Shown: positions 27,441 through 53,899, counted from the first letter of the stretch. The stretch: 64,000 nt of DNA from Bugula neritina (GCA_964035545.1 OZ037766.1:20200767-20264766), one strand, 5' to 3'. Translations and numbers: made by a program. Notes: a model not told the origin generated them from the sequence alone.

Positions 27441-27950
27441 ACCATTACAATAAATCATAATTGTAATTATTTTGATTATCATTTTGAATATTAATAATCA
27501 TAATACTAATAATTTTGTAATATTAGAATTAATTTCAATTGTAAATAAGATTAAGCATTTTAATTGTATCAGTATACATAATATTACCTTCGTGTCATTA
27601 TGTTTAATAGCAATAGGCTCAACAGGGATGCTCAGTGTTTTCTATCAAAATGTGGCAATGAAAATTTGTATTAGTTTTATTTTTGTTCTTTGCTACATAA
27701 AGCAGGTTAATATTCACCTAACTGAGTGTTTGTCTATTTTGATAAACTCCTACTGACGATTGTAATTTTATTATGTAAAAGTTAGATTTTATGGTTTTAA
27801 AAGTTGTGTTAGAGAAAAGTGTAACATTTATTCCTGTGTATAGCTAGTAATGTAGTATTCGAGGTACCTTCTGGATTACTTAATAGACCACAACCTCTCT
27901 TTTAGGGGTACAGTACACTGCTGCTATTGAAATTTTGCAGACGCTAAATA

Positions 27951-31614
<3,664 letters not shown>

Positions 31615-32648
31615 TAAGTTATTGCTAGTAATAATGTGTTTCTGTCTGATTGGTTACATGTTTGATGGGATATGTGTTGCTACAAATATTGCCCTAATAT
31701 TTTGATTATTTTACTATACGCATGTTTTCTATGTTTGTGAAGGTCATTTTAAACTCTTTTAAAGATGATTTATTCAGCTTATCAATATTCTGTTGTAAGG
31801 TTGGGAATGAACTGGTGGAATTTGCCAAACTTCTAGAACTAATTTATAATTTAAAAAATATTCAATTTGAAATTATCTTTTTATAAATAATAGAAAAATT
31901 TGCACATGCTGTATCTTTCAGAGTTTATTCAAGTCATTGATCAGTAAATTAGTATCTCTTATTCCTTGAAGTCAATAATGCTAGGAGACAAAGAATTTTA
32001 AGCTGCTAATGTTGTGTGCCATATATGATTAATTTTTTGGTTTTTATATTAAGTTTCATTGGAAATAAAAATGTGTTTGTTGCAGCAAATATGAGGAGTT
32101 ATTTCTCGGTGTTGATTATCATTTAGGTGAAAGTCTTGGTTGTTTTAAGAGATGCATTTAATTTTTAATCAACAATGTTTTGTGGAAAGAAATAGAGACC
32201 AGAATAAAAGTGTGACTTTTGACTGAGTAATAACATATAGGTTAAAAAGTCATAAATTTAGGAATTTTATCATTTGTCAAAGTGGGGAAACAAGTGAGCA
32301 TATAATGACATACCAGCTAACAGGAAAAATTTGCTATAAACACACAAGTAAAAAATTTTATACTTGCCCTTAGAGTTTGGACTATATACAATTAACTTAA
32401 ACTTATATATTATAGTATATGTAGAATATGCATATGTTTGTATGTGAGTTGACTGAGGAGCAAGCAATATATGAAATGTAAAAATAACATCCCAAAAGTA
32501 TTTTAAGTACAATTAACATTATAATGTGATGAAATGAAGTTTAGGTATTTGAAGCAGTTTAAGTAGTACGTAGTTTTGCCTGCATGTAAATTGTAGATGT
32601 TAATTCTGATTTCTTGTTTCTGCTAGATTTGCACAGCTTGACATAGTT

Positions 32649-36074: not shown

Positions 36075-39000
36075 CTAAGAGTGGATGGCTTCATCTAGAC
36101 AACCCACTTTGTAGGCTTCACTAGGTTGTTCAATATTGTCTATTCTCTCTCTAACTGAATAGTTATTGTCTATATTATCAACATGAAGGACTCCCATGTT
36201 ACTAGACTGCTGAGCAAAACAATCCACACTGCCTGTGACTGACACGTCTGTAGAAGGCTCAACCCTATCTAATTCTGAGTTATTACTTTCTTCAAACCCC
36301 GAGGAGCAAGAACTACTGTCAATGGAAGTTGGTTGCATTGGAGGGGCATGATTTGGGAGATCTCCAAACTGTTTAATGCCTGTTTGATTGTCATCTGTTT
36401 TTGTAACTGGAGCAACATTATTTTTCCGTAAACGCCAACAAACTACGATTAGAATTACCACTGAAACCACCAGAAATATGGCAAGAATAATAACAGCCCA
36501 TGTTAACAAAGTAGCCTTATTTCCATTTTCAGTATCATTTCCCTCATGTTGAGGTAGCTTTTCAAAGTTGACAGGAATACTCCTGATGGCATTTGCTGCA
36601 GGGTAATTATTGTAGGCAGTAACTTCACAAGAAGCGAAGCCGTCTACTTCATCGCTAGGAATAAGGTATCCACCTGCAGAAAGGAAGCTGTCTTAGCAAA
36701 AAATACAACAGGAGCTTACTCAAAGAAACAGCAGTTGGATTGTTTACACAGAAAAGATAAACTTTAACGAAGCTAGGTTGGTCAATACTGGCATTGTCTA
36801 CTGCAGTGAGAAATTTTTCAGAAAGCAATGAAATATTATATAAATATGTGGTGCAGGCTTTACTATGACTAGGTGAAGACCAAGATTTACCAGAAAGCTT
36901 TTCAACATGGCTGACCCTTTGACCATCACACAACAAATCCTTGAACTTGATGGGTAGAGGAAATTCCTGTAGAATCTTTACCTCAAGAAAGACAGTACTA
37001 TTTATAAAAGGGATCCAATGAAGACTCATGTCTATGGTTCCAGGATCTACAAAGAGTAGCAGATAGTAGCATAAAGAAGTACGATACATATTGGTAGTAT
37101 ATCGTTGCATACATGTAATACACACATACATACATTTAATACATACATACATGTAATACATACATACATATAATACATACATACATGTAATACATACATA
37201 CATACATGTAATACATACATACATACATGTAATACATACATACATACATGTAATACATACATACATGTAATACATACATACATGTAATACATACATACAT
37301 ACATACATGTAATACATACATACATACATGTAATACATACATACATACACGTAATAGGCTACATACATGTAATACATACATACATGTAATACATACATAC
37401 ATACATGTAATACATACATACATACATGTAATACATACATACATACACGTAATAGGCTACATACATACATACATACATGTAATACATACATACATATAAT
37501 ACATACATACATACATGTAATACATACATACATACATGTAATACATACATATATACATGTAATACATACATACATACATGTAATACATACATACATACTT
37601 ACAAGTAGTTAAAACGATATCTAGAAAGCAGATATTCTGACTCATGGATTTTATCTTCAAATGATCAACGACAGAGTTTTGTTGAGAGGGGGTATTGGTA
37701 GCTGGGTTTGATATATTGTAGAAGGTATACTCGAGCACACAGGGTAGCCCTGCTTCACAGTGTACTGTATCAAACACATGTTCATTCAGTATACGGGATA
37801 TCGGATCTCCATTAGTATATTGTGCATCCTTAGATACCAAAGAGAAGCTTTGTGTGCCTTCTCTCTACAAAATTTACTAAAATTAATAACCTATCAGTCC
37901 GAAATGCCCTTTAGAATCTTGAGATTTTTAAGATCCCAAGTTTGGCATATTTATTTCAACACAACACCTAGCAGCTGCCTTTTGTATTTATATTTACAGC
38001 AGTAAGTACTACAAACAGTAAGCTCATGTAGTCAAACTCCATCAACATTCAAAACAAGGTAATCTTTAGACCAAGCATCAATAGCATTTTCAATGCTAAC
38101 TAAAAACCTACTCCAGAAATTTGTAATTGAATTTCTGAAAAAAACAGCTTTCACACATTTTTGTGCAATGTTATTTTGTCCTGAAGTACACGAAAGTAAA
38201 TTGCATCTAATATTTTGCTGTCAAAAACCTCTAATTTTACTCAGCTGAAGAATTAAAGTTTCAAGTTCAAATTCAATTAAAATGTCGAACTAAATTCAAA
38301 TGAGCCCACAGTCAACATTGCTAATTGAGAGCTCTTATGCATTTCCTTGATGTTGGTAATGGTTATATTTTTCTCAATCCTAATTATTTATCAGTGTGAT
38401 TATTTCACTGATGTAAAAATAAATAAATATACATTAATAATAATTATATTAGTAATTATATCAATAATAATAATAAATTATTATAATTTGTTTATCATTA
38501 TTATTATTATTATTAATGGTAATGATGAATATTTAATTTCATTAGAAGGGTAAATAAAGCAAATCTTTGTAGTCTGCAATATTTTAAAAGTTATTTGAAG
38601 TATTAGAAATACAGTTTAGGAAACATAGTGAATGAGTTCAGTTTACACTTCAAGAATATGGCTAAAAGTGTGGTGATGGGGTGCTGAGAGATCTCTGACA
38701 GAGCAAGAACTTCCTACCAGTAAAGTATTTGATGCATATACACCAGTCAAGGTGGGACAAGCTTGTTGATAACTCTACCATTTTGGTAGTGTATAGAACT
38801 CTATGAGCTCTGATAACTTGCGCTTTGCTTAGCTTGATTGGTTATAGATTAACGACATAGTGTGACTGCATATAGACATAGCCACAAACATTTAGATATA
38901 GTATTATAATGGAGAACAAAGGATGACTCAAGGAAAGAGTACTTTATAGTTCTAGACAACAGAGATACCAACCAATATTGGAAGTTCAAATTTCAGAACG

Positions 39001-39810
39001 AGACCATATGAGTTCATGTCCTTATGGTAGACATCAGAGTATATGAATTTAATACTTGCATACTGGTCAGTAACAAGCCTCGTTCCGTTAACTGATACTT
39101 TACAAGTTGAGAACTTCTTTGTCTCATGGGAAGAGTCTACAGAATATTAAAAAATTACCACCTATTAGCAATTACTAAAGTTTATTGTAAAAATTACAGA
39201 CACAATTTTAACAAAATTAGCAAGAGTTTCTCTGCAATATGCACGAAACTTTACGGTAGTAGAAATAATGATTGACTAAATCAAAACCCATATAATTTAC
39301 ATATTAGACTTTACAATTTATATTATTACTTTACCAAGTAGGTAAAAGAACTTTATATTTATACCAATAGAAATAATGTGCAATTTAAGCTGTCAAAATA
39401 AATTTAGTGAGCCTTCAGTTGCTAAGTAAACAAGCTCATTTATTTAAGAGGATATATGGTTAAAATGTCATAACAAAAACTAATTCCTGCTTGATTAAAA
39501 TTGCACGAAGTATATTGCTATAAACACTGTGGTAGATCTACTAGACTTTCTAGTGATCACACTCAGGGGGATATAATAGGCAGCAATACATCTTCTCATC
39601 AATTGCGTTGTGAATATTGCAATATTGCCTCAGACAAAATGGCGGAATACTGATAATTTGAGCGCAAAGTAATGGCTGCAACTTTACCTAGACTAAGTGT
39701 TGTTACAGCACATTTAAATATCAGATAAAGGTTTGACTTTTACCTTGAATTCTGAGGGCAGCAACAGTGTATAAAATAGCCAAAGTGATGACAGTGTTCA
39801 AAGTCCACAT
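36075..39810 (-). CDS. Type I membrane protein with Ig-like ectodomain, paralog A; exons 39810-39744, 39136-38973, 37864-37603, 37046-36891, 36673-36075
   Basis: Signal-peptide exon MWTLNTVITLAILYTVAA; phase-consistent GT-AG splicing (1,0,1,1); Cys-containing beta-rich ectodomain; TM segment LLTWAVIILAIFLVVSVVILIVVCW followed by RLRK; Ser-rich tail; exon-by-exon similarity to paralog B. Confidence 0.82.
37107..37596. repeat. Compound (TACA)n-TGTAA microsatellite in intron 3 of paralog A
   Basis: Directly visible; it produces the spurious MYVC-repeat ORFs. Confidence 0.95.
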
Positions 39811-42157
39811 AGCGTCATATTTTCTAAACAAAATAATAATACAAGTACTGTTGCTGGTTCCTAACTTCACTCAGTTTACAAGCAGAAAAAGTTTTAGTCT
39901 GGATAAAATTCTACACTCAATCAAGCTTCTTGAATAATCTAATAGCTACCAGCACATAAGCTTACAGAACTAGATTTGTGAGAGTTTAACAGCCAGGTAT
40001 TACTGATATTAATTAACTAAATAAAGTAAGTTGGCAGCACCTATTAGCAAGTTCAATTAATTAGAAGGAGCAATGTGCTAACTTTTAATAAGTCATAAAA
40101 TAGTTCGACTATAATAAACTTTACATAAATAATTGGTGCATTTGTAACTAATTTTATATTAATTTTATCTAAGCATGTACTTGAAAGTCCAAAGTATGTA
40201 TAAAGCATAAATTTAATGTTTTATTTCAACTAGTAACTTAGAACTTTTAGTTTCAAAACAGGAAAATATCAGTATTTAATTTTAATCAATAGAGCTTAGC
40301 AACTGTAAAAGAATATGCTTCTGTGACTAGTTCAATGTCTAAGCAAACAACATCTTAATAGTGCCTTGCAGCTTCATCATGCTGATGTGTTTCAATTATA
40401 AAACTCAATGCCTAAAAAATAGCTTGGGCAAAGCATAAACTCAAAAGCCAGCCAAAAGAATAACCCAGATCTAGATGGAACAAATTTATTGGTGGACACT
40501 CAGGAGTCACTGTCACAGGTGGTACACCCTGACACATCTAATCAGTAAACTACAATAGTAATCGCAACTACTCATATCAGTATCATTAACTCATAAAAAA
40601 ACTCAGAAAAAATGTATATTACATTTTGGTATTATGTAACATTCATATTATCTTTGTGCATAGTGTTTAGACTTTAGAGCACGCAACACAAACATTCATT
40701 GTGGTTATTTACAAAGTTAAATACTAATAGTTGTGTTTATAGGCATATTAAATAAAAAGGCATTTTAGAATTCTGAAAAGAGCAATGCTCAATAGAAACT
40801 CAAATTCTTTAATTTTCTTACTAAAAGGTCATAGCACCAGTGTTTTATAGACAAAAATAGAATATACAGGTGTATTTTAATTTAGTAGTTTTAAATCAAT
40901 GTTCATTCTATCTAAATTTAATTAAGAAGCTGGAAAAAGAGGAAGTAATTACAGGAAGAAAAAAGATGGTAATTGCAAGTTACTGTCTTCTTAAATAATA
41001 ATGAGTCATGGTGAAATAATAAGAAAAAACAGAAGTACAAGACCTACTTACAGTTACTTTCAGTCTTAATAATGTTTATACACTAATACTTGGAAATATG
41101 ATTCAAGGGATTAGTAAATTACTATTAGTATAAGAAAATAATTTACTGCTCACAATAAATATAATACTAATAGTAATAGTATTATCAAAGTGTTAATTAA
41201 CAGGCAACCTGTCTTCTCTCTCATAACAAAGAGGTTCATGTTGACATCAGCTTGGTTTCATTGACAAACCCACAAATATCACACTAATACAGTATTAGTA
41301 TTACTAATAGTAATAGTAATACTAATAGTGATACTAATACTATTACTATTAGTGTTAGTAATACTAATAGTACTACTACTAGTACTAGTATTAGTACTAG
41401 TAGTATTAATACTTAATAGTAAATGTAATAGTCTAACTTATAACTTATAACTTTAACTAATACTATAGTAATAGTAATACTATTACTATAACTATAACTA
41501 TAAGCCAAAAGATAACTATTACTATTACATTACTATTAGTATTAGTATTACTATTAGTATTACTATTACATTTACTATTAATATTACTATACTAGTAATA
41601 GTATTAGTATTAGTATTAGTATTACTATTACATTAGTATTATTAGTATTAGTATTAGTATAAGTATTACTATACAGTATACTAGTAATAGTATTACTATT
41701 ACTGAGTACTAGTATTAGTATACTATACTAGTATTACTATTAGTATTAGTTATACTGTATTGGTATTACTATTACAATTAGTATTAGTATTAGTTACTAT
41801 CAGTTAGTGTTACACATCAAAACTAAAAGTCGAAGATTAACTTTAAGAAAATCAAAATGAAAATGTAGCCGTGCAGGTAAATAACAACACTAACTCACAT
41901 AATTATTTTACACTACCCTTTTGACTATCATAGTCAGATTAGAGCAATTATGGAATTATCTAATCAATTAGCCTTAGGCACGTTTGATAATCACACCATC
42001 TAACCCACTGAACTCAAAATATCTTTTCCAGTTCAGTGTTCTAACTTCTAACCCGCGTTAACGTTGTTGTAGTTTTTGTTCCTGCTAGTGCTACTCAGTC
42101 ACATGAGTGTCGGTGTCCCTAGAATCAGAGGAATCGGTATGAGACAGTCTCGACCCG

Positions 42158-42527
42158 AGTGCTTTAGAAATCTGAAATATATACTAGGTGATGAGTAGAT
42201 GCTACAAAATTGTCTTTAAAAAAGGTACGAACCCAATGAACTCAATTCTAATAACTATTAACTATTCCAGCTCAGTGGTACGAACCCGTCTTATTTCGAT
42301 ATCTTAGAGTTATCTTCTTTATGTAAAGCAGCTACTATAAAAAGTGCTTTAGAAATCTGAAATATATACTAGGTGATGAGTAGATGCTACAAAATTGTCT
42401 TTAAAAAAGGTACGAACCCAATGAACTCAATTCTAATAACTATTAACTATTCCAGCTCAGTGGTACGAACCCGTCTTATTTCGATATCTTAGAGTTATCT
42501 TCTTTATGTAAAGCAGCTACTATAAAA
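42158..42527. repeat. 185-bp tandem duplication, exact by eye
   Basis: Copies start at 42158 and 42343 (AGTGCTTTAGAAATCTG...). Confidence 0.92.
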
Positions 42528-42586
42528 ATGTTAAAGGGCAGATAGTTTCAGTTAAGTGGATAGGGGACCACTTTATGTTTAACCTT

Positions 42587-45500
42587 TAGCCCTTTGACTA
42601 CCATTGGCCACTCTGCTATAGGTAAGCCCACTGAGTTATATATTTTGTTATGATCATTTTAAGCAAAAGTAAAGAAGAAGGAGGTGATTTTCGTGTCCAG
42701 CTGTTTGTAATGAATATTCTATTCGATACGATTTAGTTTTTTGGCTTTTGCAAATAATGCTATATAGTCTAGACTCTAGAAGTAACTTGCCAGAATGTGC
42801 TCAAAAAATTAACTTATTTCACTTTACTCGGTGGCCACTCAAAAAAGTTGTCTCTAGACCAAAATTTTGTGCTGATTCTGAATCTACAAACTCTAGAATC
42901 TTATCTCTACCCAACCTCAGGCCATTGCAAAGAACAAATCCATATCTTGAATGGGTAATAGAAATAAACCCGACCGTGCAAATAATAGCATCCACTATTA
43001 ACTAGCTGTCTATAAATAACAATATTTGGTGAGAAACCAAAATTGGTTGTTTCTTTTTTAAAACTCTACACTGACTCTGAATCTATAAATTGCAAAACAC
43101 TATTTTTATTCAAAACCAAGTTGTCAATAGAAACACTTGTTTGCTATATGAATGAGATACGTATGACATATTTGGCAGAAGCATATGAAAGGAGCTAGTT
43201 ATGTAAGATCGAAAGCCTTTTATACTGATATGTAAAAGAATTAAGTGTTTGAAAAATATACATATTATCGATTCATTTTGCAATCTTTTAAGCACCGACC
43301 AAATGAGTCTTCTATTGATTTGGCAGTAATCACTAAATATGTGTAAAAAAATAACAAGATTCTGTATATGTATTTTAAAATCACAAAAATATGAAGAAGA
43401 TTGAAACATACAATGTAAATTTCTTGTTAATTGAAGCAAATTATATAACAAATGTTTCAAAGTAGTGCTTCATTGCATTAACTATAAAAATTTTTTACCA
43501 TTACTGCCATCAATTTCATTTGTGTATTTTTCTCCAAAGTATTTTTTGTTTGGACAATTCTTACATTGGCGTACACACTTCACAGTGCACTGCATTTGAG
43601 ATTTCTGACATTCACATCAGGATGTATTGCAACTGGTTTTACACCAGCGGTATAATATGTTTTTAATGCATTTTTGGGCACAAGGGCTTGAGTCAGTCAT
43701 CTTATAGTGATGCTGCCATTCTCAACAATTTCTACCCATAATATTGTGGAAATGGAGCATTGACAAAAGCAATTGTTGCCCTTCTCTAGGTGGCTGTCTG
43801 ATCAATATTTTACGTGCAGTATAAGTTCACTTTTTGTGGGGAAAGCTGCAAGTTTTATTGAGCCGTCTTTAAGTTGGAGAACAGAATACAGCATATTAAA
43901 CATCATCTATGCTTATTTACAAACTTCTCTATTTAAGTAGTTTCAGTTGTGACTTGCAATATACTTTCCAAGCTGTTCAAAGCTTTCAGCACATTGTAAA
44001 TGTGTTTTCAAAAAGGAGTAAATTGGTCACTTTCTTTTTCCATAAAAGTGCTAATCAAATCACAACCTGGTTGAGCATGAAAGCCAGGAAGTGCTGCACT
44101 GCACGAAACTCATATCCAAGTTCATTTGCAGCAGAATTGACATCTAAATATCTCATACAGGATCACCACGTTATGTGAATGGATATACATTTTCAAATAG
44201 TAATATATTGCAAATATTGGGAATTTATTGTTATGCACAATGATTGAGAGAACATTCTTCAGGACATAATATTTTACATGTGAGATCATGCGTGTAGGTT
44301 GATTGATTGATTTATTACATATCACAAACATGACAACACGTTGCAAAATTCAGTGTAAATACTGGCTATAATAAGTAGGAATGAACAAAAATAAGAGAAA
44401 AAATCAAAACTCTGTTGGATTATTTAAAATAAAAGCTCATTTAAAGTATTTACAAGATGTCGCAAGAAGCTATCTCTGCCCCATGCCCCTCTATATTTTA
44501 TGGTTCGATATCTTCCAGAAGGGCATTGACTAAGAAAGTTATTGATGAAATGGTCATTGTCTGTTATATATTTGATGGCAAGTTCTTTAGTGAGTTTCTG
44601 AATGTGCAAATCAATGTTTAGATACTTAATTCCGAGTTTTGAGCAATCTTTGAGAATTCTTCGAATAGCCTTTTTATCACTGGCATAGATACAAGTAAAA
44701 ATAGTAGGTAGACAATAGGCGATGCGGGACATGATGAAACTTTTGAATAGCATATTTGCTAGAGGTTTAGAGCTAAGATACGCAAAATTCTTCACAATAT
44801 ACATTCTTCTTGATGCTGATGTTACTACTGATTGTACATGTTCATGAAATCTCAAATTCTGATCCACTAACACACCAAGATATCTCACTTTTTCAGACAA
44901 TACAATGTTTGTTCCATTCAATACGAGAGTAGGGGTATGAGGTTTAGCACGTTGGGTTGAGAACATCATTTCTTGGGTCTTACTAGGGTTTAATAATAGA
45001 TTTAAATCATCACATTGCTTAGAAATTCTTTTAATCTCGTCAAAGTAAATATTTAGATCAGACTGTTTGCCAATGCAGCCAATAATGCAAGTATGTGTCT
45101 CATTACACTATACTTCGGTTTTCTTATGAACTCTGCCATGTTTTGAAAGTTCTAGCTAAATGCAGTTTTCTTCAATTCCCACAGCTAAGAAAATATCTCT
45201 CTATAGCCTTTTTTCACCCTATGTTTTTCACAAAAAAGCACTATAATTGCAAAAGTTGACAAGAAATTTTTGATTTGAACAAAAAAATGCTGTTCCATGA
45301 CCACATATCATGCCTTGATCTCTCCATAATTATTCTTAAAACTGGTTTCTCGATAAGTCACAGAAAAAATCTATCATGCATGAAGAAGAGAAATGGGCTT
45401 TTACAACAATTTTTGTAAGGAATGTATCAGCATGCAACCCAAATGTAGGAACAGCGTTCACTTCTTAAAGTTTGCCATTTCATCAAAGAAAATAGTAGGT

Positions 45501-46553
45501 TTTTAGGCAGGAGTATGTGTGAAGCATAGCAGTCTGCAGTCAATTCTATTTCAATAACATCCATGGGAGCACATACATACGTTTATAAGATTCTTATACA
45601 TGATATAAGATTGTGTTTAACGTATCATATAGGTATGAGGTGTTATGAATTGTCTACCAGAACCAGACTCTAAATGGGCCTGCAAGTACAGAGCGATTTT
45701 AATGGAATTGAGAGCGGGTAATCTGATGCATGCGAGTTAATTTTATCATAAGTTGATATTAGTTATAGCAATGCTTATATGTGTTTGACGAGGAAATTTT
45801 CATTAGACTCGTACTTTCATTGCTATCATCTAAGCTTCTCCCATACTTTCTAATGTTATAGCAAAAATGCTGTCTAAAATTGTGTAGGGATATTTTTATA
45901 ACAGCAACACATGCCTAGGTAGTCCTTACCTTAAATGTGTTGGGTCTGTGCTAATTAACTTGCTCAAACTTGTGGTGATACCTGGTGTTAGTTTTTCTGG
46001 TTTACTCAATTAGTCTAGATTTTAGAACAGCTTGGCCTAGTTTTCTTGTGAGAAATTATTCTTTTTTGTGACACATGATGCACATAAAAGAAGTATACTT
46101 GCCCATGATTTTTGAATAAGGCACCACATCAAATTAGTAACCATATTTAAAGTCATTAGCTTTAATAATTTCAAAATATTTAATTCCAATTGATACAGAA
46201 TTAGGGAAAAACAATTCCTTTAAAAGTTTTTAAAGAGCTTTGTAACCTGCTGGGTGGACAAAACAGTCTAGAAATTTTACAAAGTATCTATGGTCATCTG
46301 CAAATTTTTTTACCTGTATATAAACTAAATTAGTTTTAATAATTTCAAGATACTTGACTGATTTAGACAAAAGTAAAGAGAAGACAACTCTTAATTTATT
46401 TTAAAAGTTTGAGGGCTTTTGTGGCTAACTGAGTGCACAGAACGCTCTAGAGTTTTCAGATTAATTCAGACTCTTAAAACTTTCAATTTCTGAAAAAATG
46501 ATGTGGTCACCCCTCGGAGTGTAAAGATTCAAGGATAAATGAAGGTTAGGCTA
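42587..46553 (-). mobile_element. Degenerate AcademX-like DNA transposon (XPG-like domain plus Cys-rich finger), interrupted by a LINE fragment
   Basis: Minus-strand frameshifted remnants 'ALPGFHAQPGCDLISTF' (~44030-44100), 'FPTKSELILH' (~43820-43850), Cys cluster ~43550-43620 and 'IFFDEMA' (~45480). Inverted subterminal similarity between ~42820-42900 and ~46440-46520. Ends approximate. Confidence 0.6.
44300..45090 (-). mobile_element. 5'-truncated LINE (RT C-terminus, ORF 44424-44969) with AATAAA and (AATC)n tail
   Basis: LNPSKTQEM, RYLGVLVD..LRF..HV and LFKSFIMSRIAY motifs; simple-repeat 3' tail. Confidence 0.85.
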
Positions 46554-47399
46554 CTTCCAGACTAACATTGTATTTTTCCTTGTGCATAAATAGGGACTAA
46601 AGTGAATCTAACTTCAGTAACTGAAAATGGAGAGTAGGTATGACCTAAATTTAATAATATTTATAAGTACATATAAGAGAGTATGTGACCCGCTACCCGA
46701 ACAGGACAAATCGGAGATAGGTGAGAATAGAATAAGAGAGTATGTGATGGAAAGAGGGAGAGGGAAGAAGTAAGAGGGAGAGGGAAGGAGAGGGCAGAGT
46801 TTTGTTAATATGAAGTTTCTGAACGTACGTCACTTATGTGCATACATGCATTTCTTAAATTCTTTTTTTACTGGATGCATTATTCAACCAGCCAGACATA
46901 GTTTTAGCAGACCATTTAATTCTGCATGTAGGTTTCAAATTATTGTTCGGCTCACTACATAGTTATTTAGTACAGTGCCATTACGTTACTGGATTTAGAA
47001 AAGGATAGCAACAGTAACAATTTTACAGAGCATTAGCTACTGAGAGTTTTATTAGAAATAGATATAGATAAGATAAATACTGCAGTCTAAAATATATGAC
47101 ACATGCAACTTTGTCATTTCAAAAACAATTTTACAAAAAAACTTTTATAAAATGAAAAAAAGAGAAATTTGTGACTAGTTATTAGCACCAAACATAGTCT
47201 TCCACTATATAAGGAAAATCTGAAAGTTGCATAAAACAATCTGGCACCAAGTTAGATGAAGATGTGGAAGAGCTCAACATGCTTCGATATTTAAATACAA
47301 TATGTACATTTAAATTTTATAAAACAACTAATGGCCTTTGAAACTAAAACAACAAATGATTTTTAATGGCAAGGACTCTTAAATTCCATTCTTAAGATA

Positions 47400-47610
47400 A
47401 TGTCCTGATAGTGGTAGTAGTGGTAGCAGTGGTAGCAGTGGTTGCAGTGGTAGCAACAGCAGCATTAGTAACAGTTGCAGTAGTGAAAATAAAGTCCTAG
47501 CAATAACACCTAATTGTAATAATAGTAATGAATAATGAAAATAATATCTATAGTAAAAAAGTAGCAGTAATAACAGTAGTGGTAGTAGTAATAACAGTAG
47601 CAATATTAAA
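47400..47610. repeat. Degenerate TAG/CAG/TAA trinucleotide tract downstream of paralog B
   Basis: Visible triplet repeats; they explain the poly-Leu ORF 47379-47675. Confidence 0.8.
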
Positions 47611-47655
47611 CATAGCCAGTATAAATTTAAATTTAAAATAAAAGTGTTGGAATTG

Positions 47656-50600
47656 TTAGCAATTATGTTTTTCATTTAAAACCTGTGGCTTCAAAGTACC
47701 CTGTTGTTCTGGAGAAATGCTAGATTTGTGAGCTTCATCTATACAACCACCTCTGGTTGCGCTACAACCTATGACTGCTGAATGTGCGGAGTGACTCGAG
47801 CTATCTAGTCTTACAGAAGATCTGCCATCAGTAACCAAGTCGATGTCTGAGCTGTAGACACTGGCTCTATCAAACTCCCAGGTCTTTGGTGCCGGTGGCT
47901 TGTATTTTTCAGCCATTTTATCATCACAATCTCTCAGTTCATTGTCAGGAGCCAGAGCTTGATGAGGTGATGCGTTTATTATATTGTTTATTACATTACT
48001 ACAATAAGCCCTACGGGTAATCAACATAATCACTGAAACACCTAACGCAACTATGATCAAGCCTAGAACAATAACTACTGCATGGAGACTGGTGAAAGAT
48101 GGAGAGACCGAATACGTAGCACCGGCTGTTTGGTCTGTGACAAAGGTTTGTAAAACTGTAGTTGAAGGATGGTAAACCCGCTTGTGTACAGTTCGGGAAA
48201 ACAGTTGGTTTGATAGAGTAACAGCACACTCAGTGTAAATCATCAGCTGCTCAGTTAAAATAAGGAACCCATCTACAAATCACAAAAACATTAGTTTTTA
48301 GTAAATCTACATTATTTCAAATATGGTTAGGAACAGTAGTGGAGAAATTAAGATAGCCTAAGTTCTTTAATTTTATTATTAAATTTTGGTTTGGGGCGCA
48401 GGTTGACATTCCTGCGAGAACATAACTTATTTCACTACATTTCTAATTTAGAATACAGGCTTTTTCCAATTTCTCCATTACGGCACCTACCTCCACTTCC
48501 TATGTAGCTTGCTACGTGTAAACAATTTAGAATTCAAAATCTTACTGACAAAGTAAGATAGACAAAACTCATTGTAGAATTTTGGAGTCATCTTACCACT
48601 AGTTTCATTGGCTATAGTGTCCTTGTCGTTACACAGCAGATGTTTCTGTTCAGGGTAAGGAAAACCAACTACCTGAACCAGTTGAAGTTTGTGAACAGGA
48701 CCTAAATTTAGCCATTTCAGTTTAAAGCTGGGCTTTTGGTAATCTACAATCGAATGTATGTTGTCTTTCTGAGTAAAAGGTCAAAACATGTAAGCAATTA
48801 ACATGAACTCAATAATTTCAGTACAGCTTTCTGAATAAAATAATTGTGTTAACATTGGCTAGACTACCATTACTATACTAAGCAAATAAACTGAGTAATT
48901 CTTCAAAAAAAGTTTAATAGTCCAAATTTCAATATTCATTTCGTGAAAATGGCAGTTTGAACAGAAATATAATTCTATGCACCTAATATTATTGAAATTA
49001 CTACAATTTAATGCACCTTTTAGAATCAACAATTAAATTGTGTATCATTAAATAATCTACCTAGTTTATAACACATGGAAGTTGTAGGCTGTTACTTTAC
49101 TGAAGTGCAGTACAACTATCATTTTACAGTTTCTACTATTGCCTTAAGCCTGTTTTTGTACTAGTTCATCATAATGAGTAAATTGTACGATTTCATAACT
49201 TACTCATATTATTACCAATAATTATTCTTATATTTAAAAAAATTCTTTTTGGCTCCTATAACCAGTAAGCAAAAAACATCAATATATTGGATTGGCAACC
49301 AATAAGACACTACAGCCTAGTCTATCATTCAGTCAAATCTATACACCTATTGTGAAAAATTGACCTCACAGAACTGTTGAGATGTACATGTATGTTGTAG
49401 AAATGAAAGAACTGAACAAGTATCTGATCTTTACAATGACATTATGGTTGTAGATTTGAGCTTTTTATCAAGTTTCAAGGTTATATAAGAAACAGAAAAA
49501 TTAATCTTAGACAGGAAACTAAAGATTGCTTCAGAAAAAAATTGTGCAACTATTTATAGAGGCATTTATTTTATACCGAGCTTACAAAATGTTGTAGAAT
49601 TTATAGTGATTATGGCACACATCTTTGATTAACTGAGTTTCAAAATACCAGAAAAAATAAATTCAAAACTTAAATAAGCTTTAGTGAAGCTCATAAAAAA
49701 CACAAGTTGCTAATATTTTACTATCTGGCCGCACATTATTTTCAGAGATAAATAATTTACAGTTGACACAAAAACATCTTTCATAAATAAACATGTTTCT
49801 TCACCACTCACTTTTTTTTATAAAAAATCAAATGCCTAATACTAAAAAAATTCTACAAATAAGTAATTATTGGCGGCAGTTTAAGGAATGAGTACGTAGA
49901 AATTATTTTCATTTACTGTTTGATTAGAAAATGATTGGTTGTGACAGAACCTTATTATGTGTGTTGGCTATTTCAGTGGATAATCAGATGTATTGAAGTC
50001 AAAGGTATACCTTACATATGACTAACTTGATATAATGATGAATAAACACAAGAAACAGGCAAACTAAGGCAGTTTACCTGTAGCACAGTTGTTGTAGTGT
50101 ATGCAGTATGCACCATATAATACATATATTATATAACAGAATATAGATGAGCTATAGAGCTGCAGAGCATATTACACATGTATATGAATTGAGGTACCTC
50201 TAGCTGTGGTAACGATGAGCATACAGACATCTCGACCTTCACTCTTTACCACAAACAATTCATTTCTTTCCAGATTTCTAATCTCATTCAACAAGTCAGG
50301 CACTCTGTGTAGAAAGTTTAGTTGGCAAGTCCCAGTTGCAGAATCTTCTTTATGGCATTCTTGTTGTTTAACATTAGGAATTTCAAACCTTTGAAAGTTT
50401 TGTTGCTTCTAGAAAATTCAATACAACAATTTTATACAAACATATGATCAAAGTAGTATTACAGTATTTAGAATAGCTGTAAATGAACCATATTAGGGAA
50501 GCCATGTTATTGCAGATTATTTGTAGACCACAGAGGGCTTGTTTGTCATGTTACAAAAAGACAGCTACTAAATGGGAAGTAAAATTCAGCTTGAATTTCA

Positions 50601-52730
50601 ATTATATGTGTAAGAATCAGTGGGGAGTAGTGGACTTTTTTGCATACATATATCATAGTAGTTAGTACCCACATAATCTAATCCCATAAACTAGATTGGG
50701 GGCAGTATTTAAGTTTTCAATTGCAATACAAACCATTTAAATGCAATGAGTGACATGCAGGATTCATTAGCAACCAGCATATTTTAACAACTATACATAA
50801 GCTATGCCATTTAAATCATGCAGGAATACTTGCATAAGTATCTATCTTTATCTCCATGGTAATATTAAGATACAAAAGATGTTCAGACTTGACTTGATAT
50901 GCATAATGGGTGTGAGGGTTTCTTCTGTCAGCTGCCACAGACTGGCCATCTATCATCACAGTGCACTCACCGCTAACTAGAAATGTCAACAGAACATTAC
51001 AAGATTTGAAAAGTTGGTGACAATCCAGCATAGGGTATACAAAACATGAAAATGGGAAGTAAGACATTGTATAAATGGGCTGCTTCTTAATTGTATTGAA
51101 GCTTTAAGTCAAAACAATTTCAGGAAAAAACGTTTTGTTTGACACTTTTTGACATTACACTGATGTAAGCATAACAAAGAAACCACATAACATTTGGATC
51201 TAGATTTTTAAAAACTCATTTCATGTAAGAGTAACTTGATGGAAGCCTTAAATGTCCAGCTCTATTGTATTAGGTGTTGTGTAGAAAATTTGGGCGCATA
51301 TGTTAGGCAAGAGCTCAGCAGCTTTTAGATTCTATTCGAAAATGCTAAAATGTTCGTGTTTAATATACACTAACACTACGGGGATGTGTTGGAGGTGCTA
51401 GGCAATGATGAAGAGCATTCAAAATCTTCTATTGGGAATGTTTAATAGTCAGTAAACACTCTAAAGAGATCAGTCATAAACCAGTGACTGGAAGGCAGGT
51501 TTAGTATAACACAGGTCATGGGTTTGAGTCAAGGTAATGTCAGGAAGATCATCAGGCTATAATTGCTCTTGTGTCACTGCAAAAGCCCTCAAACCATGCT
51601 GCAGCATACAGTAAGAGGCACAGTCCCTAGTCCTCTTGAGAAACTGCTTGTCATCAGTGATTTCACAGGAATGGGGACTTTTAAAAACGCGTTTCATTAT
51701 CAACACTACGCAAATTTGTTTGAAGTGTTAGACAGTGGCTAAAAGCCCCTGGAATTATATGTATTGAAATGGTATTACATAGATGAGAACCTTAATAACC
51801 CAAGTTCTTAAATTGCCTTGGTGTCCGTTGGTTTGGGGTTGAAATTCTCAAGAGGAACATAACTCTGTTACAGATTTTTTATTTAAATCACAGGCTTTCT
51901 CAATTAATTTTTCCATTACAGCATAACAGCGAATTTGGTAAGCTAAATAATAGATTATAAGTTGCATAATTATAGTTGGGTAATATAATTATAAGACGAT
52001 CATCATATTTTTTTCAGGAGGTCAAACTTTCAAGAAAAAGACATATCTACAACAAGGCAATCAATTCGAAAATAATCAACTATGAAAAAACTACAATTTT
52101 GAAAGTTTTGTGAGTTGATTGTTTGAGCACGACATACAGCTGCACACAATTTACTTGATAAGTCAAGTTACCAACAATTACAGCCTACATTTGGTACACT
52201 ACTAACATATGGTTAAATATCTCAATAATATAAACCATCAAACGTTTTGTGTCAACTTAGAGCAAAGTTGTTTAGCCAGTTTTTAATTTTTCTGCCGTAT
52301 ATAATTTTAAACTTGAACAGTTTTTTAATATGATTTTATCAACTTTTAAAACTTCAATATATTGTGTGAATTGTTTGCTGTTACTTAAAAATTGCTGATA
52401 CCGCCTCATGGCGTTTCAAGTTCATATATATACTTAAAACGCTGCAATCAATGTGTCTTGGCTGTTTTGGCTTCCACGCTTCTCCAACCTAACTAATACT
52501 TGAGATATTAAGGAAAAATTTAATTAAAATAATCATAGCAACATAGGAAATTAAATAAAGCATAAATTTTGCAAGTAAAGTGATCTGCCACAACACTAGT
52601 GTACTATGCATAACTTGCAACAACAAATATTAAGATAATGCATTTACACCCATGCAAGTTAGTTTCAACAATGCTCACCTAATATCCAAAACACAGAAGA
52701 TAAGATTACACAGGAAAGTGACATCTGCAT
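47656..52730 (-). CDS. Type I membrane protein with Ig-like ectodomain, paralog B; exons 52730-52679, 50976-50834, 50408-50198, 48743-48597, 48272-47656
   Basis: Signal-peptide exon MQMSLSCVILSSVFWILG; same intron phases (1,0,1,1) as paralog A, with intron 2 GC-AG; GFPYP..LLC and YTECAVTLSN motifs; TM segment AVVIVLGLIIVALGVSVIMLI followed by TRR; tail contains GCIDEA. Confidence 0.82.
51505..51690 (+). mobile_element. Degenerate SINE related to the copy at 57960-58147
   Basis: B-box-like GGTTTGAGTC and shared core TGTCAGG...ATAATTGCT. Confidence 0.5.
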
Positions 52731-53899
52731 AGGTAGACTCATATCTTATCTCATTCATCTCACACAAATGCATATATCTAATATCTAAAAGGGTTACTAT
52801 AACTGTAACTAGCAGATTGAACAAAGATCAAGATACAATTTGTAATCTTGAAGAAAAAAAAATTGAAAGCAAGTAAACAAGTAAAAGTATATACAAAAAA
52901 TTGATGTACAGTTCAAACTACAAACAAATAGCAAAGTATAAAATTTAGTAACGATATGACTACAGAAAGCAGAGACTGCAATTCATACTACTAGCAAATA
53001 TCTCAAATGCAATATACCATAGAAAACTCATTAGATTTCAGTCTTTTACAAACTCTAAAAGTCTAATAGTGACACCCCACCATTACAGCCACTAGTTTAG
53101 GAACAAATGTGTGCTTTCAAAACAATAGTAACATAAAAGTTTTTGTTCCATGCACCATTACTATCTTTTTTCAATTGTATATAATTTGAATTTCATTCGA
53201 GCAGAATTAATTTTTTAATTTAAAATGGTCTTTTTTGTTTCAGACTACAGTTCAAACTTCATTTTAGTATAGCTGTAAGCATATATTATAACTATATTTA
53301 CTTTATAAGTATAAATTTAAAAAATAATCCTAAGACTTAAATTAAGATAAGCAAATACTACTATTAATTAACTATTAAGAATGGAAAATTAAATTTAGTA
53401 TATATAGCAATTATATCATAGATATATAAAATATTAATAATAGTCTAATACTAAAAGTACTTTAAAGTTTATACTATTATTATTACAATTATTATTATTA
53501 CTTATAAATTGTAAGTCTAATCATTATAATTTTTATATTTATAGTAATAGTAAAACTAATAGTTATACTCACTCTGTGACGATAGAACATTCAGTTATCA
53601 CAAAATGTTCAAGTTAAATGCCTCATTTATAACAGTGCGTTACAGTGGGCATGACAAATAATCGTCACATCACATCACTGATTTGTTGTCACTTGAGAAA
53701 ATTTATTCTCAAGTACCGGTATGGTTGGAGTAAGAAAACAGTTGTGCCAAGTCTTTGCAGCTATTGATGTCAACTGGCTTCTGCTCTCAGTTCTAGTGAA
53801 CACAGTTGTGTTAATGATCTCATCATAGTTATAAAATTGAGTGTTATTGAATGCTTCATTTTCTATAAATTTTGAAAAATGTCTTCAGGTGATTTCGTC

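What the first reader, a model, noticed from the sequence alone, without database searches (positions are those of the whole stretch)
36075..52730. Tandem pair of highly diverged Ig-like surface receptors: candidate immune or allorecognition family
The two same-strand genes share five coding exons and identical intron phases (1,0,1,1) but little sequence. Anchor motifs align: CKVSVNG/CTVMIDG, CVL/CQL, KSMSQNICFL/KSEGRDVCML, W..EFPLP..LLC/W..GFPYP..LLC, GYL..SCEVTAYN/GFL..ECAVTLSN. GxPxP and C-x-V-x-x-x-N patterns suggest Ig-like folds. Signal peptide, two or so Ig-like domains, TM segment and disordered tail in a rapidly diverging tandem cluster parallel invertebrate recognition loci such as Hydractinia Alr. 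That is an analogy only; I do not recognise these as a known family.
Basis: partly seen in the sequence, partly recalled or inferred. Interest (0 to 1): 0.8.

Follow-up and report, generated by a model that had tools for sequence, protein, structure and literature searches.

The report
Bryozoan orphan Ig-like receptor gene pair
Two neighbouring genes of the moss animal Bugula neritina encode fast-evolving single-pass surface proteins with one predicted antibody-like (Ig) domain and no detectable relatives, and nothing tested points to an immune or self-recognition role.

Summary
Two minus-strand genes lie at 36075-39810 (A) and 47656-52742 (B). Each has five coding exons with intron phases 1,0,1,1, giving intact reading frames of 415 and 393 aa. 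B's intron 2 needs a GC-AG donor.

A-B similarity is too weak for BLAST or HMMER, but it is collinear:
- Exon-by-exon pairing beats all but 5 of 5040 permutations.
- All six ectodomain cysteines and all four exon boundaries sit at matching positions.

The genome is Bugula neritina. Gene A matches GenBank KAF6028627.1, a "hypothetical protein".

"Ig-like" is supported for the membrane-proximal domain only (AlphaFold2 pLDDT 80; structural Z up to 10.1 against Ig domains). No Pfam Ig model matches it. The N-terminal ~140 aa module is unresolved.

An exhaustive search of 1.84 billion proteins and profile searches of the own genome found no other member, so this is a pair and not a cluster.

Gene A evolves fast (pN/pS 0.62 against 0.08 for the neighbouring kinase), but its distal tail is conserved (0.11). 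Six North American sequences are nearly identical. The tails carry no ITIM or ITAM motif. Allorecognition therefore stays an untested analogy. No RNA evidence could be obtained.

The parts
39744..39810 (-). Gene A exon 1: start codon and 22-aa signal peptide; phase-1 donor G|GTAAAA
   Evidence: donor identical in the other lineage; matches the N-terminus of P0002
38973..39136 (-). Gene A exon 2: first half of the N-terminal module, with Cys1 (CKVSVNG); phase-0 donor TTG|GTTGGT
   Evidence: same junction as in GenBank model P0002. Cys1 lies 44 residues before the exon end in both A and B.
37603..37864 (-). Gene A exon 3: second half of the N-terminal module, with Cys2-4; phase-1 donor T|GTAAGT
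37108..37598 (.). 21-bp minisatellite (about 24 copies) inside intron 3 of gene A. It is open in all three minus-strand frames and produces a spurious 313-aa ORF.
   Evidence: It is collapsed in the other lineage, where GenBank model P0002 reads through the intron.
36891..37046 (-). Gene A exon 4: first half of the Ig-like domain (strands A to C'/D), with the W, FPLP and LLC motifs; phase-1 donor G|GTAAAT
36713..36890 (-). Open-frame read-through after exon 4 of gene A. It is intronic, not coding.
   Evidence: It has a stop codon in all six other Bugula sequences and is not in P0002. It would add about 58 residues between the C' and E strands.
36075..36673 (-). Gene A exon 5: strands E-G of the Ig-like domain (GYLI...C.VT..N), stalk, TM helix, juxtamembrane Cys and 117-aa tail ending in GCLDEA...; stop codon at 36075-36077
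   Evidence: Distal tail pN/pS is 0.11.
52679..52742 (-). Gene B exon 1: start codon (a second ATG lies at 52730) and signal peptide; phase-1 donor G|GTGAGC
50834..50976 (-). Gene B exon 2, with Cys1 (CTVMIDG). The inferred donor is a phase-0 GC-AG donor, TAT|GCAAGT.
   Evidence: There is no in-frame GT donor. The boundary falls 44 residues after Cys1, as in gene A.
50198..50408 (-). Gene B exon 3, with Cys2-4; phase-1 donor G|GTACCT
   Evidence: Cys4 is followed by 8 residues and then a split codon, as in gene A.
48597..48743 (-). Gene B exon 4: first half of the Ig-like domain (W, GFPYP, LLC); phase-1 donor G|GTAAGA
47656..48272 (-). Gene B exon 5: GFLI...C.VT..N, stalk, TM helix, juxtamembrane Cys and 112-aa tail with GCIDEA; stop codon at 47656-47658

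Best explanation
Genes A and B are an old tandem duplicate pair in Bugula neritina (chromosome contig C2, about 20.237-20.254 Mb). Each encodes a single-pass type I membrane glycoprotein of about 400 aa.

Architecture, from N- to C-terminus:
- a signal peptide;
- an N-terminal beta-rich module of about 140 aa with four conserved cysteines (exons 2+3, fold unresolved);
- a membrane-proximal Ig-like beta-sandwich (exons 4+5);
- a short stalk and a TM helix with a cysteine at its cytoplasmic end;
- an acidic, Ser-rich tail of about 115 aa with a PxxP at the same distance from the membrane and a shared distal segment (D.ID ... SVR ... GC[LI]DEA).

The Ig-like domain lacks the canonical B-strand Cys and C-strand Trp. 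Its two conserved cysteines sit in the C/C' region and in strand F.

Shown here: the gene structure, the paralogy signal, the predicted Ig-like fold of one domain, the absence of detectable relatives, fast non-synonymous change in the Ig-like domain and proximal tail, and strong constraint on the distal tail.

Inferred: the proteins sit in the plasma membrane as adhesion or recognition receptors. Their ectodomains are free to change, or are driven to change, while the conserved distal tail docks a conserved intracellular partner. The ligand and the biological role are unknown.
For: Gene models: intact 415-aa and 393-aa frames with phases 1,0,1,1. All gene A splice sites are identical in a lineage about 7% diverged. 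Exons carry no frame-shifting indel, whereas introns have many. GenBank model KAF6028627.1 uses the same junctions for introns 1, 2 and 4.

Paralogy: exon-wise z-scores reach 4.7, and only 5 of 5040 permutations match the collinear pairing. The six ectodomain cysteines and the juxtamembrane cysteine occur in the same order. Distances from conserved residues to exon boundaries are identical. GC[LI]DEA occurs only in these two tails within the window.

Ig-like fold: AF2 of P0002:197-305 with the window's exon rows gave pLDDT 79.9 and pTM 0.68. VIA-align gave Z 10.1 (rmsd 2.2 A, 84 residues aligned), and nearly all of the top 50 chains are Ig domains. Foldseek hits were all antibody light chains, with TM 0.55-0.62. 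The nearest ESM Atlas structures are C1/C2-set clusters, and all ten top language-model neighbours are IgSF membrane proteins (0.90, 187 features).

Orphan status: phmmer against 1.84 billion representatives found only its own cluster. There was no Pfam or PDB sequence match and no further copy in the genome.

Selection on gene A: pN/pS is 0.62 overall, 1.2 in the Ig-like domain and 0.11 in the distal tail. The neighbouring OSR1-type kinase scores 0.08.
Against: Gene B has no counterpart in any searchable data set and needs a rare GC-AG intron, so it may be unexpressed or decaying.

The Ig-like model rests on a 5-row alignment. The same region scored below pLDDT 50 when the whole ectodomain was folded from a single sequence. 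No Pfam Ig model matches even at E<=10. Foldseek E-values are only about 1e-2.

The pN/pS values for sub-regions rest on 5-22 substitutions each. The receptor function is inferred from architecture alone.
Confidence: 0.6

Rival explanations
1. The pair is a self/non-self (allorecognition) or immune recognition locus. Variable ectodomains would act as identity or pathogen/symbiont sensors, in parallel to Hydractinia Alr or Botryllus fuhc/fester.
For: The architecture is a type I IgSF-like protein, and the Ig-like domain and juxtamembrane region evolve fast (pN/pS about 1.2-1.3). The genes are a lineage-restricted tandem duplicate. Language-model neighbours include 'Allorecognition 2' and 'Histocompatibility ligand' clusters at 0.88, which counts only as a lead. 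The host is a colonial animal in which allorecognition is expected (PMC9546547, PMC7576161).
Against: Four North American sequences have identical coding regions, and two partial ones differ by 1-4 nt. The 7% gap to the window's copy equals the genome-wide divergence seen at an unlinked dynein locus. There are only two genes, not an expanded family. The tails have no ITIM or ITAM. The substitution counts are too small to show positive selection. Sampling is thin and partly from the same project.
Confidence: 0.07
2. Gene B is not a functional paralogue. It is either a decaying duplicate or an unrelated set of open frames, and the A-B motif matches owe much to chance and to shared composition (signal peptide, TM helix).
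For: BLAST and HMMER do not connect A and B. Five of the seven exon-piece z-scores are below 2. Intron 2 needs a GC donor. B's last exon was not found in the 5.8-billion-protein word search, and B lies outside the fetched part of the GenBank contig.
Against: All five exon frames are open with matching phases. A 207-codon open frame in 33% GC DNA is very unlikely by chance (about 1e-7 per start, my estimate from base composition). The permutation test gives p of about 0.001. Six of six ectodomain cysteines and all four boundaries are in register. AF2 confidence for the Ig-like domain rose from below 50 to 80 when the rows from the window (its own gene A exons and gene B's exons) were added. This is consistent with a compatible fold but is not proof.
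Confidence: 0.15
3. The proteins are extremely diverged members of a named family of type I membrane proteins, for example the dystroglycan/sarcoglycan type.
For: Pfam DAG1 (PF05454) matches P0002 residues 258-344 at E 2.3e-4 and 21.1 bits. It matches gene A's exon 5 at E 6.5e-3.
Against: The score is below the curated cut-off of 23.3 bits. The match covers the stalk, TM helix and basic juxtamembrane stretch, where composition drives scores. Gene B gives no such hit. Neither the exhaustive search nor the PDB sequence search returned any dystroglycan or sarcoglycan protein.
Confidence: 0.04

Closest known systems
Immunoglobulin superfamily single-pass receptors with C1/C2-type membrane-proximal domains (structural neighbours here: antibody constant domains, IgNAR C domains, butyrophilin and PD-L1/PD-L2 C-type domains, titin/obscurin I-set domains)
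   Same: Type I topology. The predicted beta-sandwich of about 90 residues superposes at Z 8-10. Phase-1 introns bound the domain-coding exons, which from general knowledge is usual for IgSF genes.
   Different: No Pfam Ig model matches. There is no B-strand cysteine and no C-strand tryptophan. The two conserved cysteines lie in the C/C' region and strand F, so any disulfide would lie within one sheet. I recall a similar arrangement in CD4 domain 2, but that was not tested here. The domain is split by an intron. The N-terminal module has no assignable fold.
Hydractinia Alr family (Huene et al. 2022, PMC9546547)
   Same: Invertebrate colonial animal. Type I proteins whose Ig domains lack the diagnostic sequence motifs and are recognised only by structure prediction. 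Six conserved ectodomain cysteines. Tandem arrangement.
   Different: Alr is a family of 41 genes in one complex, is highly polymorphic, has V-set plus I-set domains and often carries ITAM or ITIM tails (PMC9546547). Here there are two genes, near-identical sequences within one lineage, no tyrosine motifs and no detectable sequence relation.
GenBank KAF6028627.1, hypothetical protein EB796_013063 [Bugula neritina] (P0002)
   Same: It is the orthologue or allele of gene A in the Virginia draft genome: same exons and 86% amino-acid identity (57 of 408 residues differ).
   Different: That model retains intron 3 as about 33 spurious residues, because the minisatellite there is short and in frame. 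It carries no annotation, and no partner gene B is linked to it.

Membership tests
Immunoglobulin superfamily (Ig-like fold) | Seven- to nine-stranded Greek-key beta-sandwish of about 90-110 residues | tested here: met
   For the membrane-proximal domain only, and on a predicted model: AF2 pLDDT 79.9; VIA Z 10.1, rmsd 2.2 A, 84 residues; Foldseek and Atlas neighbours are Ig domains.
Immunoglobulin superfamily (Ig-like fold) | Match to a Pfam Ig-clan profile (ig, I-set, V-set, C1-set, C2-set, Ig_2, Ig_3) | tested here: not met
   There was no Ig family hit at E<=10 for P0002, for its halves or for any exon.
Immunoglobulin superfamily (Ig-like fold) | Canonical B-F disulfide and C-strand tryptophan | tested here: not met
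   The predicted B strand (model residues 18-27) has no Cys. The two cysteines are at model residue 40 (C/C' region) and 68 (strand F), and the only Trp lies in strand A.
   Single-sequence AF2 of the whole ectodomain gave pLDDT 40. The Atlas's own model has pLDDT 0.41. Cys1 and Cys4 are about 120 residues apart, too far for a standard Ig B-F pair.
Allorecognition loci of the Hydractinia Alr / Botryllus fuhc type | Exceptional allelic polymorphism within populations | tested here: not met
   The coding sequence is identical in L007, L008, L018 and L019, and L016 and L017 differ by 1-4 nt. The sample is small and partly from one project, so this is a weak test.
Allorecognition loci of the Hydractinia Alr / Botryllus fuhc type | Locus-specific divergence above the genomic background | tested here: not met
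   Introns and flanks of gene A diverge by 5-7%. An unlinked dynein locus diverges by 5-6%.
Allorecognition loci of the Hydractinia Alr / Botryllus fuhc type | Genetic linkage of fusion or rejection phenotype to the locus | not testable with these tools
   This needs crosses or association data.
Hydractinia Alr family | Expanded gene family in one complex, with ITAM/ITIM tails in many members | tested here: not met
   Only two genes were found, with no ITIM, ITAM or YxxPhi motif.
Dystroglycan (Pfam DAG1, PF05454) | Score above the curated gathering threshold | tested here: not met
   The score was 21.1 bits against a cut-off of 23.3. The match lies over the stalk and TM helix only, and gene B gives no hit.

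The most novel reading that the evidence does not exclude
The pair is part of an undescribed bryozoan recognition system, either for self/non-self or for the Endobugula symbiont. In that reading the membrane-proximal Ig-like domain is under diversifying selection, the conserved GC[LI]DEA tail signals through a conserved partner, and gene B shows presence/absence variation between lineages.
Probability: 0.06. Interest if true: 0.8.

Novelty: new member of a known kind. Interest (0 to 1): 0.3.

Why it matters
No recognition or adhesion receptor of bryozoans has been characterised at the molecular level. This pair is a concrete, lineage-restricted candidate surface protein. It is also a second example, after Hydractinia Alr, of an Ig-like domain that sequence profiles cannot see.

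As it stands, it is one of many orphan IgSF-like membrane proteins in invertebrate genomes. The available polymorphism data speak against the more exciting allorecognition reading.

A practical by-product is that the public model KAF6028627.1 contains a retained intron.

Tried and rejected
- Pfam, exon by exon and on P0002: only sub-threshold hits driven by the TM helix (DAG1, SIT, SNORC and similar), which I rejected.
- PDB sequence search: no match.
- Whole-ectodomain AF2 from a single sequence: pLDDT 40, unusable and not searched.
- One MAFFT alignment of all exon fragments to P0002 scattered gene B's fragments and was discarded.
- Looking for gene B in the GenBank contig: the 10 kb upstream of gene A there holds a GC-rich retrotransposon-like insertion, and B lies beyond the fetched range.
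- Word search with B's last exon: nothing found. A full-length model of about 393 aa would fall outside the tool's length window, so this does not show absence.
- First attempt at a genomic baseline, with a dynein exon against metagenome contigs: only other eukaryotes came back. A second attempt through a Logan contig worked.
- The long reading of exon 4 (to about 36713) was rejected.
The exons were joined only inside a local script, to check the frame, count stops and cysteines and list sequon and hydropathy positions. The only full-length protein used was the public model P0002.
Full report
**What is there**

The window is AT-rich eukaryotic DNA. It lies at G000:C2:20200767-20264766 of a 216.0 Mb assembly. 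This matches the Darwin Tree of Life assembly of the bryozoan Bugula neritina from Plymouth (216.00 Mb, PMC11480708). A public protein 86% identical to gene A is named "hypothetical protein EB796_013063 [Bugula neritina]", KAF6028627.1.

I read the minus strand around each open segment and placed the exons by splice signals.
- Gene A: 39810-39744, 39136-38973, 37864-37603, 37046-36891, 36673-36075.
- Gene B: 52742-52679, 50976-50834, 50408-50198, 48743-48597, 48272-47656.

Both sets give uninterrupted frames of 415 and 393 aa, with intron phases 1,0,1,1 and AG acceptors behind pyrimidine tracts.

Three qualifications apply.
- Gene B has no in-frame GT donor for intron 2. The only solution that keeps the shared phase-0 acceptor (AATTTT[G/C]TAG|A in both genes) is a GC-AG intron with the donor TAT|GCAAGT. 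This places the boundary 44 residues after the first cysteine, exactly as in gene A.
- Exon 4 ends at an early donor..S G|GTAAAT in A and ..S G|GTAAGA in B. The open frame that continues behind it in gene A carries a stop codon in all six other Bugula sequences and is not used by the GenBank model.
- There is no transcript evidence.

No joined (spliced) protein was given to any search or fold tool. Exons were searched by reference. They were joined only inside a local script, for frame, stop, cysteine, sequon and hydropathy bookkeeping.

**Is gene A real?**

Six other sequences of the locus were recovered:
- the GenBank draft from Virginia (L008);
- three Logan contigs from runs SRR4020080, -83 and -84 (L007, L017, L016);
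- two JGI contigs (L018, L019).

They differ from the window by 6-9% overall. In the coding sequence, 89 of 1227 nt and 57 of 408 aa differ. All exons stay open, and all eight splice sites are identical. Exons contain no frame-shifting indel, whereas introns contain many.

pN/pS is 0.62 for the whole gene. It is very uneven along the protein:

| Region | pN/pS |
|---|---|
| N-terminal module | 0.44 |
| Ig-like domain | 1.2 |
| Proximal tail | 1.3 |
| Last 63 residues | 0.11 |

Three exons of the neighbouring OSR1/SPAK-type kinase (Pfam Pkinase and OSR1_C) give 0.08 between the same two genomes. Gene A is therefore a real, fast-evolving gene with a strongly constrained C-terminal segment. The sub-region values rest on few substitutions.

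**Are A and B related?**

Standard searches do not connect them. Local alignment of corresponding pieces against shuffles gives these z-scores:

| Piece | z |
|---|---|
| Signal peptide | 0.1 |
| Exon 2 | 1.4 |
| Exon 3 | 1.6 |
| Exon 4 | 1.7 |
| Extracellular part of exon 5 | 4.7 |
| TM helix | 1.4 |
| Tail | 0.6 |

Non-corresponding pairs average about zero. Only 5 of 5040 permutations of the pairing reach the observed sum.

The registers also agree.
- All six ectodomain cysteines occur in the same order, and a seventh sits at the cytoplasmic end of the TM helix.
- Cys1 lies 44 residues before the end of exon 2 in both genes.
- Cys4 is followed by 8 residues and then a split codon in both.
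- Trp is the 10th full codon of exon 4 in both.
- The exon-5 motif G[YF]LI starts at the first full codon, and its cysteine is 15 residues in, in both.
- The tails share a PxxP at positions 56 and 58 from the start of the TM piece.
- The hexapeptide GC[LI]DEA occurs nowhere else in the window's six frames.

I put tandem paralogy at about 85%.

**Fold**

No Pfam family matches at a meaningful level. The best hit is DAG1 at 21.1 bits, below its 23.3-bit cut-off. It lies over the stalk and TM helix and is absent from gene B. The PDB sequence search returned nothing.

AlphaFold2 on the whole ectodomain of the public model, from a single sequence, gave pLDDT 40. Only the TM helix was confident.

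The membrane-proximal domain (P0002:197-305) was then folded with the window's exon-4 and exon-5 translations of both genes as extra rows (alignment A3). This gave pLDDT 79.9 and pTM 0.68, with strands at 6-13, 18-27, 34-35, 39-40, 43-44, 49-51, 54-58, 67-75 and 78-86.
- Foldseek against the PDB lists only antibody light chains (E about 1e-2, TM 0.55-0.62).
- The Foldseek-independent VIA-align scan gives Z 10.1 (rmsd 2.2 A, 84 residues). Fifty chains reach Z>=8, and nearly all are Ig domains: antibody and IgNAR constant domains, titin/obscurin/myomesin, butyrophilin, PD-L1/PD-L2 and Dscam.
- The nearest ESM Atlas structures are C1/C2-set clusters.
- The Atlas's own ESMFold model of residues 205-300 also aligns to Ig and FN3 sandwiches at TM 0.56-0.67.
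- The language-model neighbours of the whole protein are all IgSF membrane proteins (0.90, 187 shared features).

I accept an Ig-like sandwich for this domain. It is atypical: there is no B-strand cysteine and no C-strand tryptophan, and the two conserved cysteines lie in the C/C' region and strand F. The N-terminal module (exons 2+3) remains unassigned.

**Relatives**

phmmer with P0002 against 1.84 billion representatives found only its own cluster. Searches of the 216 Mb genome found only genes A and B. These used gene A's and B's last exons, B's exon 4, the whole of P0002, and A+B profiles of exon 4 and of the exon-5 ectodomain. So this is a pair, not a cluster.

**Polymorphism**

Four North American sequences have identical coding regions. 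The two partial ones differ by 1-4 nt. Overall pairwise divergence among the six is 0.04-1.0%.

The large gap to the window's copy is not special to this locus. An unlinked dynein locus on contig C4 differs by 5-6% between the window's genome and run SRR4020082. The neighbouring kinase has pS 0.19. The Virginia animals were typed as genotype S (PMC7576161). B. neritina is a complex of cryptic species (PMC11480708), so the two genomes represent deeply split lineages.

The tails have no ITIM, ITAM or YxxPhi motif.

**Verdict**

The most likely reading is a lineage-restricted pair of IgSF-like single-pass surface glycoproteins. Their ectodomains change quickly while a conserved distal tail contacts a conserved intracellular partner. 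The specific function is unknown.

The allorecognition or immune analogy gains no support from the tests that could be run. These covered polymorphism, locus-specific divergence, family size and signalling motifs. It stays at a few per cent. Gene B's expression, and its presence in other lineages, are untested.

Noticed in passing
window 37108-37598 (intron 3 of gene A); also L022 and L026: A 21-bp minisatellite (about 24 copies) is open in all three frames and makes spurious ORFs of up to 317 codons. It is almost absent in the other lineage, where GenBank model KAF6028627.1 reads through the short in-frame intron and gains about 33 false residues. Similar frame-open minisatellites sit in dynein gene introns elsewhere in the genome.
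   Followed up: partly
window 27450-31620 (+ strand): An OSR1/SPAK-type Ser/Thr kinase gene (Pfam Pkinase 5.6e-39, OSR1_C 5.4e-22) lies downstream of gene A. It is under strong purifying selection between the two Bugula lineages (pN/pS 0.08, pS 0.19).
   Followed up: partly
window versus L007, L008, L016-L019; L023 versus L108: The Plymouth genome differs by about 5-9% in nucleotide sequence from North American B. neritina data, at this locus and at an unlinked dynein locus. The Virginia draft was typed as genotype S. This is deep lineage divergence inside what is called one species.
   Followed up: partly
L008:2500-6300: The GenBank draft carries a GC-rich insertion with long open frames that look like a retrotransposon, upstream of gene A. 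The window's homologous stretch lacks it. Its identity was not checked with a family scan.
   Followed up: no
window 44424-44969 (- strand): A 181-codon ORF lies between the two genes. It has no Pfam match at E<=0.01. It looked like the remnant of a mobile element, but that is unverified.
   Followed up: partly
window 42158-42528 and 41291-41814: A perfect 185-bp tandem duplication (2.0 copies, 100% identical) and a roughly 500-bp AGTATT-type microsatellite lie in the intergenic space between genes A and B.
   Followed up: no
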